64,000 nt of DNA from NCBI GenBank assembly GCA_950097015.1, contig CATNEN010000005.1, positions 248,001 to 312,000 of the forward strand, in the 5' to 3' direction. A program made the position numbers and the translations under genes. Under the pieces are notes generated by a model. It did no database searches, was not told the origin of the DNA, and saw only the letters and a program-made list of their open reading frames with translations. Below are positions 3,201-64,000 of this stretch, piece by piece (the stretch's first letter is position 1; each line of letters starts with the position of its first letter). Origin of the DNA: Macrostomum hystrix (taxonomy: Eukaryota; Animalia; Platyhelminthes).

Positions 3201-6200
3201 AGCTTTGTTTAGCTTCGAGCAAACTTGCCTAAATTTTTTAGCTTTAATTTGGCCGATTAAATTTCATAGTGATTTCTAAGAAATCAGATCATTTTTGCTT
3301 TTAACAATGTTGGTTATTGGGAATTAGATTATAATCAGTATTAGAAAATAGGATCCTTTAATTGTTTCGAGTGGGATTTTTATTGGAATATTCTATAGTC
3401 TAGAATAGGATTATTATGAATACTAGAATATTTACTTGTAACTAGGCTACAAGGTTAGAGCGTCGGACTCACGACTTGAAGGTCGGGGGTTTGATTCCCG
3501 ACTCCACTCGAGCAATCTGTGTCATTTTAGAAAGACACTTAACACTGCATTGCTTCAGTTCACCCAGCTATTAAACGTCCATGTTTTTGCGAGCGCCTGA
3601 ATGCTTTGGGGGTGACTGATTAGTTGACAGACTAGTCAAGGGTGTCCTGTGGTTGAGCTGCGCAGCCCTAATAGTTAGGCTTGAACAGTGAAATTGGAGA
3701 AATTCGCGTCAGGGTGTCCATAGTGGTCTAGTTCCACCTGTTGTAGCTCTTTAAGGTCTAGATCGATAAGAGAGATAGATATAGATAAAGGTCGGTGACC
3801 GCCGAAGTCGGAGATGATGCAGGCACATTCGGGATAAAGTTTGAAGGTCTGGAAAGGCCGCACTGAGGCGCAGTGCAAATTCGTGTATAGGGGTGTATGA
3901 AATACACTAGCTCTTATGGGAAAAATCGGACCTTCGGCCAGAAACATTGAATATCTCGACGGTCTGAAGAGCTGGCGACTTGTTTCTTGTTTCAGAAGAT
4001 GCGCAACAAAACGTGTGCCCGTGTTCTTGAGTTTCGTGTGCTTGCATTGTTCTGTTCGGGTGCTGCAAAAAATTTGTCGGGGGGGGGAATTCCCCCCCCC
4101 CTTGGTAGTTCTACTGTTAAGAATGTGAATTGTTGTTAGTAAATAAAGAAAATCTGACAAGATTTTTCTAAACAAATTAAATCTAAAAAACTTGTCAGAT
4201 TCATCGGCGAGCTCTACATGAAGGACGTCCTGACGGCCAACATAATCTACAGCTGCATCAACGCCCTGCTACCCAATCCGTCGCAGAAAGGCGACAATCG
4301 CAGCACTCTAGTTGAGTCGCTGGAGTGCCTCTGTGAATTATTGCGCACAGTTGGCAAGAAACTCGAATCGAATAGGAAACCATCCGATGCTAATCAGATC
4401 GATAACGCGTTCGGTCGAATTAAACAGATCATTGCGGATAAGACCATAGAATCCAAGGTGCGATTCAAGCTAACCGACGTTGTTGAAATGCGCGGGAGAA
4501 ATTGGGAGCTAAGAGAAATGGAGCGTCGACTTCAGGAGCGACCAATGACAAAGGAGGAGCTGGAACAGAAGGAACGCGAAGAGGAGGCCAGGCGCGCCAT
4601 GGCGGCTAGCAATATCGGCGGCGGCGGCGGAGGTCGCGGCGGTCATCGCGGCGGCTACGGTCGACCGCCGGCATCTCCGGCTTCAGCGCTACCACCAACA
4701 GCGTCGGGCACGGAATGGACGCCAGTTGTAGCTAATAGTCGGCGTCAACAGAAAATGGATACTAGGAAACTGATCCTGGAAACTCCAAGCAGTGCTGGCG
4801 GCCTTGGCGGCTTGTCGGATTCCTCCAGCGGCGCCGGTATTGGCGGCGGAGGCAGCGCCGCGTCGTCGGCTACGCCTAGACTCGGTCCGTCGCGTCCGAA
4901 GTTTAGTCAGCAACGCGGCGCCGGAGCTGCCGCGGCGGCGGCCGCCAAGGAGACAGCCGGCGATGTCGGACGATCGCCTGCTGTGCAACGGTGAGCCGAG
5001 TGCCTGTTTGATATGCAGATTTTCGTTTGGACTGGGATTTGACGTTAGGACTATGGGATTCCCAATTTATGACTATTATAATTTTGGATAAGGGTATTAG
5101 AAATCTTTGACTATTTCGCTTCTTTTATATGTTATAATATTTATATAGTTAAGGACTTCAACTGGTTCTTAATTTTATTCCTGTAAATTCAGGATTCTAG
5201 GGTCAGAGATAATAAAATATTGCTACAAAGCGAAATATGTTAATATCCGAGCTAATATCTAAAAATTCCACTGTAGTGGCATGCTATTTTCATAATTTAC
5301 AAAAAAATTATTTGCAAGACTACACCAGCGAAAGCACGAAACAATGACAATTTGTGGTCTCTCCTAAAAGTCTTGCCATATTGAAGGCTTTCCTGTTTGA
5401 GTCTCTGCAGTCTTTGTTTTCAACTAACTGTGGGGATTTAGGTTGAATTCGCTACATTTACTGCTCATTTAAACTACTCACTTTGCAAGACTACACCAGC
5501 GAAAGCACGAAACAATATCTATTTGTGATCTCTCCTAAAAGTCTTGCTAGAATAAAGGCTTTCCTGTTTGAGTCTCTGCAGTCTTTGTTTTCAACTAACT
5601 GTGGGGATTTAGGTTGATTTGCCACATTTACTACTCACAAACTGCTCACTTTGTATGTGACGGGCAAGACTACACCAGCGAAAGCACAAAACAATATCCA
5701 TTTGTGATCTCTCCTTAAAGTCTTGCTAGAATAAAGGCTTTCCTGTTTGAGTCTCTGCAGTCTTTGTTTATTTAACTTACTGTCGGGATTTAGGTTGAAT
5801 TCGCTACATTTACTGCTCATTTAAACTACTCACTTTGCAAGACTACACCAGCGAAAGCACAAAACAATATCTATTTGTGAACTCTCCTAAAAGTCTTGCT
5901 AGAATGAAGGCTTTCCTGTTTGAGTCTCTGCAGTCTTTGTTTATTTAACTTACTGTCGGGATTTATGTTGAATTCGCAACATTTACTGCTCATTTAAACT
6001 ACACACTTTGCAAGACTACACCAGCGAAAGCACAAAACAATATCTACATCTATTTGTGATCTCTCCTAAAAGTCTTGCCAGATTGAAGGCTTTCCTGTTT
6101 GAGTCTCTGCAGTCTTTGTTTTTAACTAACTGTGGGGATTTAGGTTGATTTGCCACATTTACGACCCACTTTGTATGTGACGCGGCAAGACTACACCAGC

Positions 6201-57310: not shown

Positions 57311-57317
57311 TATAAAA
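57311..57317 (+). promoter_or_regulatory. TATA box of the metallothionein-like gene
   Basis: TATAAAA about 107 bp upstream of ATG 57418. A candidate poly(A) signal ATTAAA lies at 58125-58130. Confidence 0.6.
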
Positions 57318-57417
57318 AGGCTGATGCAGAGCGGAGTTGAAATGTAAATATCACTATAATTCCAGTGAACCAGTTTCAGATTCAACTTCTCCACGCTTCT
57401 TCTAAAAGCATCTGAAC

Positions 57418-58071
57418 ATGTGTAAGTAAACTTTTATTTCTTTATTTTCTTTTTTACACTCGCATATTTCAAAATGTTAAAGAGAAATGTACGATGAAAC
57501 TCAAAGAAAAAATGAGAGAAATCCTTCGTCTTATAAGACTCGACTTTGCGAAGATATCTTAGTCAGGTTAGCCAAAACACATCGAATGTACGCAGTCTAG
57601 CCGAGTGGAGAGAAATGAATGTACGCAGGCTAGCCGAGTGGAGAGAAATGAATGTACGCAGGCTAGCCGAGTGGAGAGAAATGAATGTACGCAGGCTAGC
57701 CGAGTGGATAGAAATGAATGTACGCAGGCTAGCCGCTCCCCGAGGAACAAGTAAACATTCCCTCCGCCTTATCTCACCCAACCACCCCATTTTAAGCCGG
57801 CCAAAAGTCATGCCAGCCGTGCGCCGACGATAAGCAGAAGCACTCCGAGGATCTGTGCGGCGAAAAGTGCGAATGTCCACCAGCTGACTGCAACGCTGGC
57901 GAATGCTGCGAGAAGAACGCCTGCTGCCAGTCAGACGCGGGCAAGCAGCATCATCATCATGAGCACGGAGATGCTGGACATCATCACAAGCATGAGGCCG
58001 GTCACGAAGGGCATCATCATCAGCACGATGCTGGGCATCAGGGACATCACCATCAGGATCACAAGCATTGA
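57418..58071 (+). CDS. 92-aa metallothionein-like protein with Cys-rich domain and His-rich tail (two exons)
   Basis: Exon 1 is ATG T (57418-57421) followed by gtaagt. Exon 2 follows the ttttaag acceptor, 57797-58071 (TGA). Protein: MSGQKSCQPCADDKQKHSEDLCGEKCECPPADCNAGECCEKNACCQSDAGKQHHHHEHGDAGHHHKHEAGHEGHHHQHDAGHQGHHHQDHKH. 10 Cys, 21 His, no aromatic F/W/Y. Confidence 0.8.
57585..57735. repeat. 33-bp repeat, about 4 units, in the metallothionein-like gene intron
   Basis: Unit aatgtacgcaggctagccgagtggagagaaatg. Confidence 0.85.
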
Positions 58072-58444
58072 AGTTCCGGAATAAGAGATGTGTAGAGCGT
58101 TGTAATCTTTTCGGCTCTGAATGAATTAAAAAATACTTTAACCTCAACAAAGTCGATATTCTGTACCGAAATTTTATGAAAAAAACTTTTTGACCAATCA
58201 TCTGCATGACCATCAAGATAATATATGTTGTAAAGTTATCTAACACGCATACTTCTAAAAGCAAAAGTACAGAAAACAAAAAATATGTGACACTCGATAT
58301 TCAGACAAAGTCGGCAATCATCTTATCTTAAAGTAAATGTTCTCAATTTATTGTAACTTTCGGCTGTTATTTTGAATAAATAAGGGATGGAAAAAACCGT
58401 AGAGTATGAGATATGGGGAGAAAGGGACCATGGGAGATTGTGGA

Positions 58445-58705
58445 GAGAATGGGAGATTGGGTAGAATGGGAGAATGGGAGAGTGGGATATTTGGTAGAGA
58501 ATGGGAGAGTGGGATATTTGGTAGAGAATGGCAGAGTGGGATATTTGGGAGAGAATGGGAGAGTGGGATATTTGGTAGAGAATGGGAGAGTGGGATATTT
58601 GGTAGAGAATGGGAGAGTGGGATATTTGGGAGAGAACGGGAGAGTGGGATATTTGGGAGAGAATGGGAGAGTGGGATATTTGGGAGAGAATGGGAGAGTG
58701 GGATA
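58445..58705. repeat. 27-bp minisatellite (gagaatgggagagtgggatatttggta)n
   Basis: Direct tandem units. Confidence 0.9.
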
Positions 58706-59032
58706 TTTAAGGGAGTAGGAGATTAGGGAGAAGATGAGGGATGATGAGATTTCCCTCAGGGATAATGATAAGGGAAATGTTAAAAACATTTGACAGACAA
58801 CTAAGATAGTAATTGAATATATGTGACTTAAAAAATTGTTACATTTCAGATAAAACTGCTGTTTTCGATCACTTATAGATAAAACGATTGAAATATAGAA
58901 TATATTTATCTAATATTCAAATCTTCATTCTGTACATATATTCAACTTCAGCCTAATTATATTACCCCACCTCTAATAATCTACCTACTTCTCATAACCT
59001 AGACTCTACTTTCCACAACCAATTTCTCGTAA

Positions 59033-59315: not shown

Positions 59316-59449
59316 ACCGCGCCATTGCCCGCCGCAGCCCTCCTGCAACTTTTATTCTACTAACCATTTCTCGAAACCTAGTTCTCATTTATGTTATTTT
59401 TCCGGTACAATAAAAGGGTTTATCAATCTTATCAAACAGAAGAAATTCG

Positions 59450-62400
59450 TCATTTCGGTTTCTGTTGCTGCTGTTGCTGCTTCACAGCAGCAGACTTCTG
59501 CCTACCAGCTGAAGGAGCCCCGCTTTTTCGTCGAGCGCTTGCCATCAGGGCTGTCTTCGGCCGGTCGCCGGCGGCCCCAGCGCCGACGCCGTCTTCCCAG
59601 TCCAGCTCTTCGTCTTCGGCCAGAGAGACGCGGAGCAATTTTCTCTGACGCTTTAGAGAGGCCGGCTTCACTGACCAGGCCGCAGCTGCTGCCGCTGCTG
59701 CTGCTGTTTCCTCTTCATCCTTTTCACCATTCGAAGCCGGATCAGAAGCTGGCTTGTCAGCTTCTGTGGCTGTCAGCCGTTTTACTGATGCGATGCACTT
59801 TGTTGACTGTTAATTGGACATTGTGGGCGAGAGGTTCACTGAAGGATGAGTGGTAGATAAGGGTGAGAAGTGCTCGCATCGGCGAGACGCAATGCCTGTG
59901 AGGTATGAGTCAGTCCAGGCCCACGGGCTAAGGTCTGCGATGCCTCACACTTGCAGACGCTTTTTGAGCAGGCTTGGCAGGAAGGAGCCCTGTGCCTTCG
60001 GGTGCAGGAATCCCTCCACGCTGTCCCGTCAGCTGACCCATGGGTACACGTCCAGCGAGTGTTCAAGGCTGACCCTAGGGCAGCCGGACAGAATGGGCAA
60101 CAGTGCTGGATGACCCATCCATGGCCTCTGGCCAAACTGGGTACCTCTAGCCCTGGCTGGAGGGAAAGGTGTCACCCTATGACCTTAACAGGGTATGCGG
60201 CCAGTCCGCAGCGTTTGTGCACCTGTGCGTGATCAGGTACCTCTGATCACAGGATGATGCCAGGAGAGAATGTATACATATGCTAGCCAGGAGAGAATGT
60301 ACATATGCTAGCCAGGAGAGAATGTACATATGCTAGCCAGGAGAGAATGTACATATGCTAGCCAGGAGAGAATGTACATATGCTAGCCAGGAGAGAATGT
60401 ACATATGCTAGCCAGGAGAGAATGTACATATGCTAGCCAGGAGAGAATGTACATATACCAGCCGGGAGAGAGAATCGCGGCCGTAAAGATAGCTGTACGA
60501 GGCTCACCCAGTCATAGAAGGCCCAAGCGGCGGCGCTCCGAAGCCGAAGCTCTCTTGGATCGATGCCAGCTAGCAGCAGCTCCGCCCGTGCCGCAATCTC
60601 CGGATGAATATCGTTAACATCCATCTGGCTCAGAGTTTTGATGTCTTTTAGTAGGGGCTGACAACGCTTCCACTTCTGTAAAATGATGTAACTTTTAATT
60701 ATAAAAAACACACTACTGCTAACCAAATAAAAAGCGTAGTTTCTTAAAAAAATTAACAAAACAAAAAAAATCCTACCCGGACTCGCTTCTCATAGTTGCC
60801 TAGCAGCAGGAGCATAGCCATAACTGACTGATGAACTAGCTGGTCGGGGTCAGCGTAGCCTCTTAATTCCAGCAGGCTTTTGCTGTCCACATCCAATTGA
60901 TGAATTAGGCGCTTTTTGAGACGCCTTTCTCGTTTGACCAGCTCCCGACAGCGTTCAATCTCTTTTAGTAGTTCAGGAGGGAGAAGACGACCGCCGCTGT
61001 TAGCCAGATAAGAATCTGCTTCGACTAGCAGGGACTCCAGCCGGGTGACGTCTCGACTGCCTTCAGCCAGTTTGCGCTCGGCAGACAGTGCTGAATGTGG
61101 GGAATTATTTTAACAGGTGATTATCTGTGTTTTAACACGTGATTGTCAGTGTTTTAACAGGTGATTGTCTGTGTTTTAACAGGTGATTGTCAGTGTTTTA
61201 ACAGGTGATTGTCTGTGTTTTAACAGGTGATTTTTAGTGTTTTAACAGGTGATTTTCAGTGTTTTAACACGTGATTGTCTGTGTTTTAACAGGTGATTGT
61301 CTGTGTTTTAACAGGTGATTGTCTGTGTTTTAACAGGTGATTTTTAGTGTTTTAACAGGTGATTGTCAGTGTTTTAACAGGTGATTGTCAGTGCTTTAAC
61401 AGGTGATTGTCTGTGTTTTAACAGGTGATTTTTAGTGTTTTAACAGGTGATTGTCAGTGTTTTAACAGGTGATTGTCAGTGTTTTAACAGGTGATTGTCA
61501 GTGTTTTAACAGGTGATTGTCAGTGTTTTAACAGGTGATTGTCAGTGTTTTAACAGGTGATTGTCAGTGTTTTAACAGGTGATTGTCAGTGTTTTAACAG
61601 GTGATTGTCAGTGTTTTAACAGGTGATTGTCAGTGTTTTAACAGGTGATTGTCTGTGTTTTAACAGGTGATTTTTAGTGTTTTAACAGGTGATTGTCAAT
61701 GTTTTAACAGGTGATTGTCAGTGTTTTAACAGGTGATTGTCTGTGTTTTAACAGGTGATTTTTAGTGTTTTAACAGGTGATTGTCAGTGTTTTAACAGGT
61801 GATTGTCAGTGTTTTAACAGGTGATTGTCGGTGTTTTAACAGGTGATTGTCAGTGTTTTAACAGGTGATTGTCAGTGTTTTAACAAGTGATTTTTAGTGT
61901 TTTAACAGGTGATTGTCAGTGTTTTAACAGGTGATTGTCAGTGTTTTAACAGGTGATTGTCTGTGCTTTAACAGATGATTTTCGTTGTTTCGACACTTTG
62001 ATGTCAGGTTGAAAGTATGAGTAAAGAATCAAAAGTGATTAAACTGTTCTCACAATCTTTAAGCCGCAGACCAATGATGAGTTCGTCCGCTTGTCGCAGC
62101 AGGCCGGCTGCTGAATTGGCTCCTCCGTCCTCGGCTGCGTCTCCTTTGCTTCTAACAGCCTCAGCCGCTGCCTCCAATGCGTCTAGTCGACCCCTCTGCA
62201 GGCACTCCTTCAGCGTGGCCAGCCTCGTCTTGCGCTCTTTGCTAGCTGCCTCCGCTTCTTCGCGCAATTGCCTGCGCTTCTCCTCCGCCTCCGCTTCCGC
62301 TTGCTTCCGTTTCTCTTCTTCGTGCTTCCGATTCTCTTCTTCTTGCTTCCGATTCTCTTCTTCTTGCTTCCGATTCTCTTCTTCTTGCTTCCGATTCTCT

Positions 62401-64000
62401 TCTTCTTGCTTCCGTTTCTCTTCTTCTTGCTTCCGTTTCTCTTCTTCGTGCTTCCGATTCTCTTCTTCTTGCTTCCGTTTCTCTTCTTCTTGCTTCCGAT
62501 TCTCTTCTTCTTGCTTCCGTTTCTCTTCTTCTTGCTTCCGATTCTCTTCTTCTTGCTTCCGATTCTCTTCTTCTTGCTTCCGTTTCTCTTCCGCTTCGGC
62601 TTCCTCCTGCTTCCGTTTCTCTTCTTCTTGCTTCCGATTCTCTTCTTCTTGCTTCCGATTCTCTTCTTCTTGCTTCCGATTCTCTTCTTCTTGCTTCCGA
62701 TTCTCTTCTTCTTGCTTCCGATTCTCTTCTTCTTGCTTCCGTTTTTCTTCCACTTCGGCTTCCTCCTGCTTCCGTTTCTCTTCCTCCTGCTTCCGTGTCT
62801 CTTCCTCCTGCTTCCGTTTCTCTTCTTCATGCTTCCGTGTCTCTTCCGCCTCCGCTTCCGCCCGTTTCCGCTCCTCAGCTTCCGCTTGCTCCCGCTGCCG
62901 CTTCTCCTCCGCCTGAACGGCCTCCTCCTCAGTCAGTGGTGGCAGCCCCGAGCGCTGCCTGGCATAGTCGGCCTGTCGTCGTCGACGGCGAACAGCTTCG
63001 GCTAGTCGGCGAGAGCGTGATGTCTCGGCTTCCTGACGAGTGGCTTCGCGATTGGCCAAATCTGCCGGAGTCTCGTAGCGGAATGTGAGCAGGGTCGCTG
63101 GTGGCTTGGAGGCGGAGGCTTCAACGGATTCCAGCGTGACCGGCGACCCAGCTTCCTTTGCGTGCTGCGTGGGACGGGATGATCGGGGTTTGAATCTGAT
63201 GAGTCACGTGAGTCACGTGATGCTTTTAGAAAGTCGCGTGATGCTTTTAGAAAGTCACGTGATGCTTTTAGAAAGTCACGTGATGCTTTTAGAAAGTCAC
63301 GTGATGCTTTTATAAAGTCACGTGATGCTTTTATAAAGTCACGTGATGATTTTTTCAAAATCACGTAATTATTTTTTAAGTAACGTTTTGTTTTTTTGAA
63401 GTTTCTTGTTGCTTTTATAAGCAACTTGAGGCATTCTAATTATTCAGCCTTAAAAAAGTCACGTGATGCTTCTAAAGCCCACGCGATAATTTTAAAAGTC
63501 ATGTTCGTCCATGCCGTTCCATGATCACCTGATACCTAAATCACGTGATGCTTTGCTGGAGTCTAAGTTTACATTTCGCAGAAAAAAGCTTTAAGAGTCT
63601 TTCGTAGTCAAAAATTTAATAATTGAGCACATAAAGTTCGTAGAAACTTTCTGATTCCAGCATACCTTAGCAGCCGGCACAGTAGCCTCCAAAACGCCTT
63701 TACTATCTGTGCCCTTGAAAGCGATCAGTTCACCGTTTGGCAGCCGGAGTTTGAGTCGTTCCGTTGCCATAGCAACAGCCGACTCGGCAACGGCCAGCTG
63801 CACCACGGTGGGCGCATCAGCTCGCAACAGAAGCTGCTGGGGAGTCAAGAGCCTGCAGGAATCCGTCAGCCACCAACTCGGTCCGACAAAGGGAAACTGT
63901 TCCGCAGCGACAGTTCGTGACACCCCGACAGCTCTGACCAAATAGTTGAAGAAGCACTTCTCTTCTGCCTTGCCATTGTCTGTCTCGTCGTCTAGCGATG
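59450..64000 (-). CDS. 3' part of a multidomain protein: beta-rich (hillarin/KY-like?) domain, E/R/K helical repeat and dynein MTBD-like module; 5' end outside the window
   Basis: Exons >64000-63666, 63164-62054, 61090-60777, 60675-60508 and 59806-59450, frame-consistent. C-terminal module: SLLELRGYADPDQLVHQSVMAMLLLLG...|KWKRCQPLL...DVNDI...RSAAAWAFYDW|STKC. The hillarin/KY resemblance is from recall and is tentative. Confidence 0.7.
60260..60460. repeat. 25-bp minisatellite (gccaggagagaatgtacatatgcta)n
   Basis: Intronic direct tandem units. Confidence 0.9.
61110..61980. repeat. 22-bp minisatellite (aacaggtgattgtcagtgtttt)n filling an intron
   Basis: Direct tandem units. Confidence 0.95.
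62290..62830 (-). repeat. Coding 21-bp repeat encoding (EEENRKQ)n
   Basis: In-frame heptads within exon 63164-62054. Confidence 0.9.
63200..63370. repeat. 21-bp array (gtcacgtgatgcttttagaaa)n
   Basis: Intronic. Further single units lie near 63455-63550. Confidence 0.85.

What the first reader, a model, noticed from the sequence alone, without database searches (positions are those of the whole stretch)
59450..61090. Stand-alone dynein microtubule-binding-domain-like module in a non-dynein protein
Three spliced exons give SKSLLELRGYADPDQLVHQSVMAMLLLLGNYEKRVRKWKRCQPLLKDIKTLSQMDVNDIHPEIAARAELLLAGIDPRELRLRSAAAWAFYDWSTKC. This parallels the dynein stalk-tip pattern (L.E.RSM..PP..V.....++C+LLG....W.......F+..+..F....I.......+.......Y..+.RAS.AC..M..W). 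Here it has no AAA ring in view. It is preceded by a long charged helix and a beta-rich domain, and followed by a basic tail (RQRK, RRKSG, KPK). Inference: a motor-independent microtubule tether or cross-linker using a dynein-type MTBD.
Basis: partly seen in the sequence, partly recalled or inferred. Interest (0 to 1): 0.75.

Follow-up and report, generated by a model that had tools for sequence, protein, structure and literature searches.

The report
Dynein-type microtubule-binding domain without a motor
A spliced flatworm gene ends in a domain that is a true relative of the microtubule-gripping tip of the dynein motor, with no motor attached, and it belongs to a widespread, almost unannotated animal protein family that probably tethers other domains to microtubules.

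Summary
Both junctions appear in contigs of public runs.

The peptide's family is homologous to the dynein microtubule-binding domain (MTBD).
- A family profile hits only dynein heavy chains in the PDB, always at the MTBD, best E 1.5e-10.
- AlphaFold models have pLDDT 91-93. In an unbiased search of 48,161 chains their five best matches are dynein MTBD or stalk structures, Z 13.8 to 9.1.

The protein is not a dynein. Upstream lies a roughly 240-residue Glu/Lys/Arg-rich helix. The protein ends 118 residues after the domain.

149 relatives were collected. There are two old architectures: KY/hillarin-like (transglutaminase core plus Ig-like_KY) and EF-hand plus charged helix. They occur in cnidarians, spiralians, amphioxus and tunicates. 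Most are named "uncharacterized" or "trichohyalin-like".

Four of the six tubulin salt-bridge residues of yeast dynein are kept; one in H1 and one in H6 are not. Microtubule binding is therefore likely but untested.

No KY domain was detected in the part of this gene inside the window. I found no paper describing this family.

The parts
63666..63998 (-). Putative upstream exon (111 codons). The frame stays open to the window edge, so the gene probably continues beyond 64000. No known domain detected.
   Evidence: Open frame and GT donor after ...PAAK. No Pfam hit. Atlas best score 0.76. Not checked with reads; inferred.
62054..63164 (-). Large exon: a short non-repetitive start, the long Glu/Lys/Arg-rich helix, then the first helices of the C-terminal module. 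It ends in phase 1 at a GT donor.
   Evidence: AG acceptor and GT donor. Contigs that end at 61090 continue with further letters upstream (records 16 and 23).
62223..62942 (-). Predicted ER/K single alpha-helix spacer, residues about 186-425 of the spliced product. It has (EEE[N/K]RKQ)n 7-residue repeats and is encoded largely by a 21-nt tandem repeat at 62300-62846.
   Evidence: TRF periods 21/42/63. 71% E+K+R over 240 residues, no Asp. The helix itself is inferred from composition.
60777..61090 (-). Exon encoding the CC1-like helix and MTBD helices H1-H2 (...LDVDSKSLLELRGYADPDQLVHQSVMAMLLLLGNYEKRVR).
   Evidence: Joint 60675>60777 and piece ends at 61090 in contigs. P0001.
60508..60896 (-). 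Core MTBD-like domain, residues L547-W642, interrupted by the 101-bp intron 60676-60776.
   Evidence: Profile alignment 520-659 at 113.7 bits. Family-to-dynein matches. Models and fold searches.
60508..60675 (-). Exon encoding MTBD helices H3-H6 (KWKRCQ...AFYDW).
   Evidence: Both flanking joints in contigs.
59450..59806 (-). Last exon: short CC2-like helix (STKCIASVKRL...), an Ala-rich insert, a conserved motif, a basic tail, and stop TGA at 59450-59452.
   Evidence: Joint 59806>60508 in contigs of X1 and X2. The profile alignment runs across the junction.
59591..59668 (-). Conserved C-terminal motif KPASLKRQRKLLRVSLAEDEELDWED, shared with the Macrostomum paralogues. A looser form, PA..RQ(R/K).(I/L)(L/F), occurs in annelid and mollusc relatives.
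   Evidence: C-terminal sequences listed. In the P0002 model the equivalent stretch forms helices 212-218 and 223-234 with pLDDT 93-98.
59453..59572 (-). Terminal 40 residues: a basic, low-complexity tail (net charge +9, pI 12).

Best explanation
This is the 3' end of an expressed, spliced Macrostomum gene. Its product carries a genuine homologue of the dynein microtubule-binding domain but no motor.

Shown: the exon structure; homology of the domain to the dynein MTBD by sequence profile and by fold; the absence of AAA modules in the part within the window; and membership of a conserved metazoan family in which the domain sits at or near the C-terminus of non-motor proteins.

Inferred mechanism: the six-helix domain sits on a short pair of antiparallel helices that correspond to the distal ends of stalk helices CC1 and CC2. 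Three N-terminal helices and a conserved C-terminal motif probably cap this pair. The registry would then be fixed rather than sliding, which would give a constitutive binding state instead of ATP-controlled binding. The domain would dock in the tubulin intradimer groove through H1 and H3, where equivalents of yeast E3122, R3124, R3152 and R3159 are kept. The +9 terminal tail would help by binding the acidic tubulin tails. The roughly 240-residue ER/K helix would act as a stiff spacer of about 35 nm. It would hold the N-terminal part of the protein at a distance from the microtubule. That part is still unidentified here; in relatives it is a transglutaminase-like KY module or an EF-hand module.
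For: Splicing and expression: joints 59806>60508 and 60675>60777; P0001 has the same join.

Homology:
- The A1 profile against PDB sequences gives 60 of 60 hits to dynein heavy chains at the MTBD, best E 1.5e-10.
- 15 of 37 members hit PF12777 at E<=1, best 3.6e-6. P0029 hits PF12777 positions 99-204.
- The single coral protein P0105 hits the yeast MTBD at E 2.9e-4.

Fold:
- P0001 model, pLDDT 90.9. Foldseek's top hits are nearly all dynein; 6rzb_C gives TM 0.67 and rmsd 2.3. VIA-align gives Z 10.8 and 10.6.
- P0002 model, pLDDT 92.6 and pTM 0.81. In the unbiased search of 48,161 chains the top five are dynein stalk or MTBD entries, Z 13.8, 13.7, 12.0, 11.7 and 9.1. Model residues 57-204 align to dynein 3253-3408, so both stalk helices are covered.
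- The window product aligns with the whole of P0002 (residues 457-722 to 6-244, E 1.6e-39).

Contact residues (from PMC7042235), counted in 37 family members: E3122 equivalent 37/37; R3124 equivalent basic in 32/37; R3152 equivalent basic in 22/37; R3159 equivalent or the next residue basic in 11 and 18. All four are kept in the window protein (E556, R558, K589, K596).

Tail charge. ER/K composition.
Against: - No binding experiment exists.
- The window protein and its closest paralogue alone do not reach Pfam PF12777 or any PDB dynein chain. The link to dynein runs through the family profile and the fold.
- Two of the six yeast salt-bridge residues are not conserved. The K3117 equivalent is basic in 5/37 (Ser in the window protein). 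The R3201 equivalent is basic in 2/37 and acidic in 11/37 (Leu in the window protein). Mutating any one of the basic salt-bridge residues in yeast lowered affinity more than 2-fold.
- The core domain of the window protein has net charge 0.
- I could not inspect model coordinates, so the capping of the mini-stalk is inferred only from secondary structure and high pLDDT.
- The ER/K helix was not modelled.
Confidence: 0.6

Rival explanations
1. The domain is a true dynein-MTBD homologue that has been re-used for a different partner, such as another filament system, a membrane or a protein ligand. The family would then not be microtubule-associated.
For: The H6 arginine (yeast R3201) and the H1 lysine (K3117) are not conserved, and the R3201 position is often acidic. 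Net charge of the core domain varies from -5 to +10 among members and is 0 in the window protein. The family has its own extra conserved elements, the C-terminal PA..RQ motif and the N-terminal helices, which dynein lacks.
Against: The invariant Glu and the conserved Arg of H1 and the basic residues after the invariant Trp of H3 are exactly the tubulin salt-bridge positions. Conservation since the cnidarian-bilaterian ancestor fits a conserved ligand such as tubulin. These residues could also be structural.
Confidence: 0.33
2. The resemblance is a chance or compositional match between helical segments, and the exons are not a real gene.
For: The single exons and P0001 give no Pfam or PDB dynein hit on their own.
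Against: Spliced contigs carry the exact junctions. 149 relatives share invariant E, P and W columns. The profile hits are exclusively dynein, at the MTBD. The unbiased fold search puts five dynein entries on top, clearly above the generic helical bundles at Z 8.7 or less.
Confidence: 0.02
3. It is a fragment or pseudogene of a dynein heavy-chain gene, or a mis-assembled piece of one.
For: None beyond the domain itself.
Against: CC1 is preceded by an ER/K repeat and unrelated sequence instead of AAA4. The CC2-like helix is only about 20 residues long and is followed by a stop within 118 residues. Transcripts are spliced in frame. None of the 78 representative hits has dynein length. In the tree the window domain groups with Macrostomum paralogues, next to the Macrostomum KY-type proteins.
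Confidence: 0.01

Closest known systems
Dynein heavy chain stalk tip / microtubule-binding domain (Pfam PF12777 'MT'; e.g. PDB 3ERR, 5AYH, 6RZB, 6KJN, 8I3J)
   Same: The same six-helix globular fold sits between two antiparallel helices: Z 13.8 with 145 residues aligned for 3err_B, and rmsd 2.0 over 111 residues for 8i3j_A. Profile-level sequence homology is E 1.5e-10. The conserved core residues are shared (E in H1, PP after H1, LLG in H2, W before H3, W after H6). Four of the six tubulin salt-bridge positions are shared.
   Different: There is no AAA+ ring, linker or long stalk. The CC1-like and CC2-like helices are only about 25 and 20 residues long and are flanked by extra helices and a conserved C-terminal motif. 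The H6 Arg and the H1 Lys contacts are not kept. A three-residue insertion follows H3. The domain lies at the C-terminus of non-motor proteins.
KY / hillarin-like transglutaminase-fold proteins (Pfam PF01841 Transglut_core + PF23265 Ig-like_KY)
   Same: 63 of the 149 relatives collected carry Ig-like_KY upstream of the MTBD-like domain, and those scanned with Pfam mostly also carry Transglut_core. The nearest full-length relative of the window domain outside its own paralogue group is the Macrostomum KY-type protein P0007. The sister grouping has SH-aLRT support of 90. They share the PA..RQRKLL motif.
   Different: The 760 residues of this gene inside the window match neither the transglutaminase core nor Ig-like_KY. 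Whether such domains lie beyond position 64000 is unknown. I did not test whether vertebrate KY, leech hillarin or fly Hil carry the MTBD-like domain.
EF-hand + charged-helix proteins auto-named 'trichohyalin-like' (e.g. Nematostella P0117, Branchiostoma P0121, Ciona P0133, Crassostrea P0097)
   Same: They share the layout of a long Glu/Arg/Lys-rich helix followed by the C-terminal MTBD-like domain.
   Different: Their N-terminus is a conserved EF-hand-like module, which the window protein lacks. Their MTBD-like domains mostly cluster apart from the Macrostomum and KY-type domains in the tree.
ER/K single alpha-helix spacers (myosin VI/X, caldesmon; named from general knowledge)
   Same: Heptad-like runs of E and K/R with 71% charged residues over about 240 residues.
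   Different: The helix was not modelled or tested here. It is encoded by a recent-looking 21-nt tandem repeat.

Membership tests
Dynein MTBD (PF12777 MT) | The protein itself scores above the Pfam gathering threshold (24 bits) | tested here: not met
   The exons and the near-identical P0001 give no PF12777 hit. 15 of 37 family members hit at E<=1, best 3.6e-6. P0101 carries a precomputed PF12777 hit.
Dynein MTBD (PF12777 MT) | Profile-level sequence homology to dynein MTBDs | tested here: met
   The A1 profile against PDB gives 60 of 60 dynein heavy chains at the MTBD, best E 1.5e-10. The window product scores 113.7 bits against the family profile built without flatworm rows.
Dynein MTBD (PF12777 MT) | Six-helix globular fold inserted between two antiparallel helices | tested here: met
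   Models have pLDDT 90.9 and 92.6. Z 13.8, 13.7, 12.0, 11.7 and 9.1 to dynein entries, which top 48,161 chains. TM 0.67 and rmsd 2.3 to 6rzb_C.
Dynein MTBD (PF12777 MT) | Tubulin salt-bridge residues (yeast K3117, E3122, R3124, R3152, R3159, R3201; PMC7042235) | tested here: inconclusive
   Four of six are kept in the window protein (E556, R558, K589, K596). The K3117 equivalent is Ser and the R3201 equivalent is Leu.
Dynein heavy chain | AAA+ ring modules flanking a long coiled-coil stalk | tested here: not met
   No Pfam family in 480 or more upstream residues. The stop codon lies 118 residues after the domain. No representative hit has dynein length.
Dynein MTBD (function) | Binds microtubules | not testable with these tools
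   Needs co-sedimentation, TIRF or localisation experiments.
KY / hillarin-like | Transglut_core (PF01841) and Ig-like_KY (PF23265) domains | tested here: inconclusive
   Absent from the in-window 760 residues. The frame is open at the window edge, so upstream exons could not be examined. These domains are present in many family members.
ER/K single alpha-helix | Long run of alternating E and K/R blocks forming a stable isolated helix | tested here: inconclusive
   The composition and the 7-residue repeat fit. No structure prediction was run on this segment.

The most novel reading that the evidence does not exclude
Animals have an ancient family of motor-less proteins that carry the dynein microtubule-binding domain on a fixed mini-stalk. 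The family was present by the cnidarian-bilaterian ancestor and is kept in spiralians, amphioxus and tunicates. No vertebrate, insect or nematode member appeared in my hit lists. It has two main architectures, a transglutaminase-like KY module or an EF-hand module held at a distance by a charged helix. These proteins would be a previously undescribed class of microtubule-associated proteins. They would also offer a natural, ATP-independent version of the dynein MTBD for asking how stalk registry sets affinity, and where the dynein MTBD came from.
Probability: 0.5. Interest if true: 0.78.

Novelty: new variant of a known kind. Interest (0 to 1): 0.66.

Why it matters
The dynein MTBD is usually treated as a part peculiar to the dynein motor, with affinity set by sliding of the stalk helices under ATP control. 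Here the same domain appears in non-motor proteins, on a short capped stalk, in at least 149 proteins from corals to tunicates. Nearly all of them are unannotated or misnamed after their charged helix.

If these proteins bind microtubules:
- They define a new class of MAPs.
- They could link KY/hillarin-type transglutaminase-fold proteins and an EF-hand family to the microtubule cytoskeleton.
- They give a simple natural system for testing what a registry-locked MTBD does.

Macrostomum is experimentally tractable (RNAi and transgenesis, from general knowledge), so the idea can be tested directly.

Tried and rejected
- Pfam on each exon alone found nothing, even at E<=10.
- phmmer of single exons and of P0001 against PDB sequences gave no dynein hit, only weak noise such as kinesin light-chain TPRs and gp41.
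- The N-terminal in-window part (spliced residues 1-175) has no similarity to family members, to an Ig-like_KY profile I built, or to Atlas clusters. The KY reading for this particular gene is therefore unsupported, not refuted.
- Literature searches found no paper on a dynein-type MTBD outside dynein. Terms tried: hillarin plus dynein, PF12777, 'MTBD-like', 'MT domain-containing protein', KY-like, and kyphoscoliosis peptidase plus microtubule-binding domain. The library lacks most subscription papers, so this is weak evidence of absence.
- I tried to identify PDB chains 9fqr_Xl and 7jtk_C, which also resemble the models, from papers and by phmmer of P0105. This failed.
- The spliced window protein could not be handed to the folding or family tools, because it has no single reference. 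I used P0001 (one residue different within the core domain) and P0002 (aligns over residues 457-722) as proxies, and ran local HMMER and BLAST on the spliced product.
- The careful tree did not finish in time, so only the quick IQ-TREE result is reported.
Full report
**1. Gene model**

The finding lies on the minus strand of a eukaryotic locus whose introns are rich in tandem repeats. An earlier scan note calls this genome a Macrostomum flatworm. The closest database proteins are from Macrostomum lignano.

Reading the sequence and checking the splice sites by script gives five in-frame exons with GT-AG introns:
- 63666 to at least 63998 (frame open to the window edge)
- 62054-63164
- 60777-61090
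- 60508-60675
- 59450-59806 (stop TGA at 59450-59452)

The in-window product has 760 residues.

**2. Expression and splicing**

Contigs of four public runs from one study were laid on 59440-61100.
- Joint 60675>60777 skips 101 bases, with ends CT..AC on the + strand, which is GT..AG on the gene strand. It is seen in runs X1 and X3.
- Joint 59806>60508 skips 701 bases with the same ends. It is seen in X1 and X2.
- Pieces end exactly at 61090 and continue with further upstream letters (records 16, 23 and 31).

The runs are not on record as RNA, but intron-less contigs with exact GT-AG junctions indicate transcripts. The UniRef model P0001 (M. lignano A0A1I8G7H0, 145 aa) carries the same ...EKRVR|KWKRC... 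join. It is 87% identical to the window product over 144 aligned positions and differs at one residue within the core domain. The two upstream exons were not checked with reads.

**3. Sequence evidence for a dynein MTBD**

The exons alone and P0001 alone hit nothing relevant in Pfam or in PDB sequences. UniRef nevertheless names P0001 and P0003 'MT domain-containing protein'.

A full HMMER scan of 1.84 billion representatives with P0001 gave 78 proteins at E<=1e-3. None has dynein length, and the match usually lies at the C-terminus of proteins of 500-2300 residues.

An alignment of 37 domain segments (A1) has invariant E, P and W columns. Its consensus reads TI.EIRSY..PP..VH.VM.ATLLLLG......W......, then S.GAA.FY.W.

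Results with this family:
- The A1 profile against all PDB sequences returned 60 sequences. Every one is a dynein heavy chain (one row carries a different depositor name but has dynein length), and every one aligns at its MTBD. The best are the yeast MTBD 6kjn at E 1.5e-10 and DNAH6 at 1.8e-10.
- 15 of the 37 members hit PF12777 'MT' individually at E<=1, best 3.6e-6. No other family recurs in more than 2 members.
- The brachiopod member P0029 hits PF12777 positions 99-204 of 344, the tip of the stalk model.
- A single coral protein, P0105, hits the yeast MTBD at E 2.9e-4 by plain phmmer.
- A profile built without the four closest flatworm rows scores the spliced window protein at 113.7 bits. 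The alignment covers residues 520-659 and runs across both splice junctions.

**4. Fold evidence**

The AlphaFold2 model of P0001 with A1 has mean pLDDT 90.9.
- Foldseek against the PDB lists almost only dynein stalk and MTBD entries among the first 43 rows. Probabilities are up to 1.00, although E-values are weak. 6rzb_C gives TM 0.67/0.66 and rmsd 2.3.
- VIA-align gives Z 10.8 (3err, 5ayh) and 10.6 (6rzb).

P0002 is a 250-residue Macrostomum paralogue. It aligns with window residues 457-722 at E 1.6e-39. Its model has pLDDT 92.6 and pTM 0.81.
- In the Foldseek-independent search of 48,161 chains, the top five are 3err_B (Z 13.8, 145 aligned), 5ayh_A (13.7), 8i3j_A (12.0, rmsd 2.0), 6l4p_B (11.7) and 2rr7 (9.1).
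- The next rows, at Z 8.7 or less, are generic helical bundles that match only the N-terminal helices.
- Model residues 57-204 align to dynein 3253-3408, so the helices before and after the globular part correspond to the distal ends of CC1 and CC2.
- The ESM Atlas shape search returns mollusc relatives and dynein MT clusters.

**5. Differences from dynein**

There is no AAA module.
- The helix after H6 is about 20 residues long. The protein ends 118 residues after the invariant Trp.
- The P0002 model has three further helices N-terminal of the CC1-like helix (14-42, 46-57 and 62-87).
- It also has two short C-terminal helices (212-218 and 223-234, pLDDT 93-98). These are made by a motif conserved in the family: KPASLKRQRKLLRVSLAEDEELDWED in the window, and PA..RQ(R/K).(I/L)(L/F) in annelids and molluscs. 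One subgroup has LPRT(R/T) instead.
- I infer, without coordinates, that these elements cap the mini-stalk and fix its registry.
- Upstream lies a run of about 240 residues of (EEE[N/K]RKQ)n with 71% E/K/R, encoded by a 21-nt tandem repeat. This is typical of an ER/K single alpha-helix (general knowledge).
- The last 40 residues have net charge +9.

**6. Is microtubule binding plausible?**

The yeast MTBD-microtubule model names six salt-bridge residues: K3117, E3122 and R3124 in H1, R3152 and R3159 in H3, and R3201 in H6. Mutating any one of the basic ones lowered affinity more than 2-fold (PMC7042235).

I mapped these onto the family through the HMMER alignment and counted them in A1.

| Yeast residue | Family (37 members) | Window protein |
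|---|---|---|
| E3122 | Glu in 37/37 | E556 |
| R3124 | basic in 32/37 | R558 |
| R3152 | basic in 22/37 | K589 |
| R3159 | basic in 11/37 (next position basic in 18/36) | K596 |
| K3117 | basic in 5/37 (next position basic in 20/37) | S551, followed by K552 |
| R3201 | basic in 2/37, acidic in 11/37 | L631, flanked by R630 and R632 |

The H1 and H3 contacts are kept and the H6 contact is not. The core domain of the window protein is electrically neutral, and the family mean is +3.3. This supports microtubule binding as the leading hypothesis but leaves room for a changed partner.

**7. The family**

Pfam scans of long members show Transglut_core plus one to three Ig-like_KY domains upstream.

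Word searches with named sources place these KY-type proteins in molluscs, the brachiopod Lingula, the annelid Owenia and Macrostomum.

A second architecture has an EF-hand-like N-terminus, a long charged helix and the domain. It occurs in:
- corals and Nematostella
- amphioxus
- tunicates (Ciona, Styela, Clavelina, Phallusia)
- a bryozoan
- annelids
- a nemertean
- molluscs
- Lingula

Its automatic names are 'trichohyalin-like', 'caldesmon-like' and the like. Almost none of these proteins has a precomputed PF12777 hit.

A quick maximum-likelihood tree of the domains largely follows architecture: 5 label changes against 42.6 for shuffled labels. It places the window domain with P0001 (99*), inside a clade of five Macrostomum sequences (95*), next to the Macrostomum KY-type proteins P0007/P0106/P0107 (support 90). 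No vertebrate, insect or nematode protein appeared in the lists. That is an observation about these capped searches, not proof of absence.

**8. What this gene's N-terminus is**

The in-window residues 1-175 match nothing: Pfam, family members, my Ig-like_KY profile and the Atlas all gave no result. The frame is open at the window edge. Whether a KY module lies upstream is unknown.

**9. Novelty**

Automatic annotation has flagged a few members ('MT domain-containing protein'; PF12777 on P0101). I found no paper describing a dynein-type MTBD in non-dynein proteins, nor this family. The searchable library is incomplete. I rate it a new variant of a known kind: a known domain in a new, motor-less context, forming a broad and essentially unannotated family.

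**10. Limits**

- The spliced window protein has no single reference, so proxies (P0001, P0002) were used for folding, and local scripts were used for the spliced product.
- The sequencing runs are of unrecorded type.

Noticed in passing
PDB chains 9fqr_Xl (res 1349-1492) and 7jtk_C (res 352-574), seen with models of P0001/P0002: Two axonemal chains that are not of dynein length resemble the MTBD-like models. A bovine sperm 96-nm-repeat chain gives Z 8.2, rmsd 2.7 and 114 aligned residues. A Chlamydomonas radial-spoke-1 chain gives Z 12.6 but rmsd 6.1. Their identities could not be established here. They may be further non-dynein MTBD-like domains or only helical look-alikes.
   Followed up: partly
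ESM Atlas cluster, row 6: An oomycete cluster named 'Impact N-terminal domain-containing protein' matches the MTBD part of the model at rmsd 2.0 over 111 residues. PF01205 occurs in 33% of its members and PF12777 in 14%. This may be another non-dynein context for the domain outside animals.
   Followed up: no
window 61108-61980 and 60259-60471: Two introns of the gene hold tandem repeats. A 22-bp unit repeated 39.7 times fills almost the whole intron between 61090 and 62054. A 25-bp unit repeated 8.4 times lies within the last intron.
   Followed up: no
window 59890-60245 (last intron): This stretch attracts many contigs at 90-95% identity and high depth in all four runs. That suggests a dispersed, possibly transcribed repeat element inside the intron.
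   Followed up: no
window 62300-62846: The ER/K helix is encoded by a 21-nt tandem repeat with 86-88% matches and higher-order periods of 42, 63 and 159. The spacer length may therefore vary between alleles or paralogues.
   Followed up: no
window 59462-59481 and 59679-59708: The CAG/CTG-type runs coding poly-Gln and poly-Ala in the last exon pull in unrelated contigs and cause a spurious 'skips 203' joint at 59481>59685. I do not read it as an intron.
   Followed up: partly
P0002 (UniRef A0A1I8HEZ9) and EF-type relatives: Automatic names look misleading. P0002 is called 'MAGE domain-containing protein'. EF-hand-type relatives are called trichohyalin-like, caldesmon-like, vicilin-like, reticulocyte binding protein 2-like and GRB10-interacting GYF protein 2-like, all apparently on the strength of the charged helix.
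   Followed up: no
window 57311-58800: The neighbouring region holds several coding-looking tandem repeats of 33-bp, 27-bp and 81-bp units. An earlier first-reader note describes a Cys/His-rich two-exon gene there. I did not examine it.
   Followed up: no
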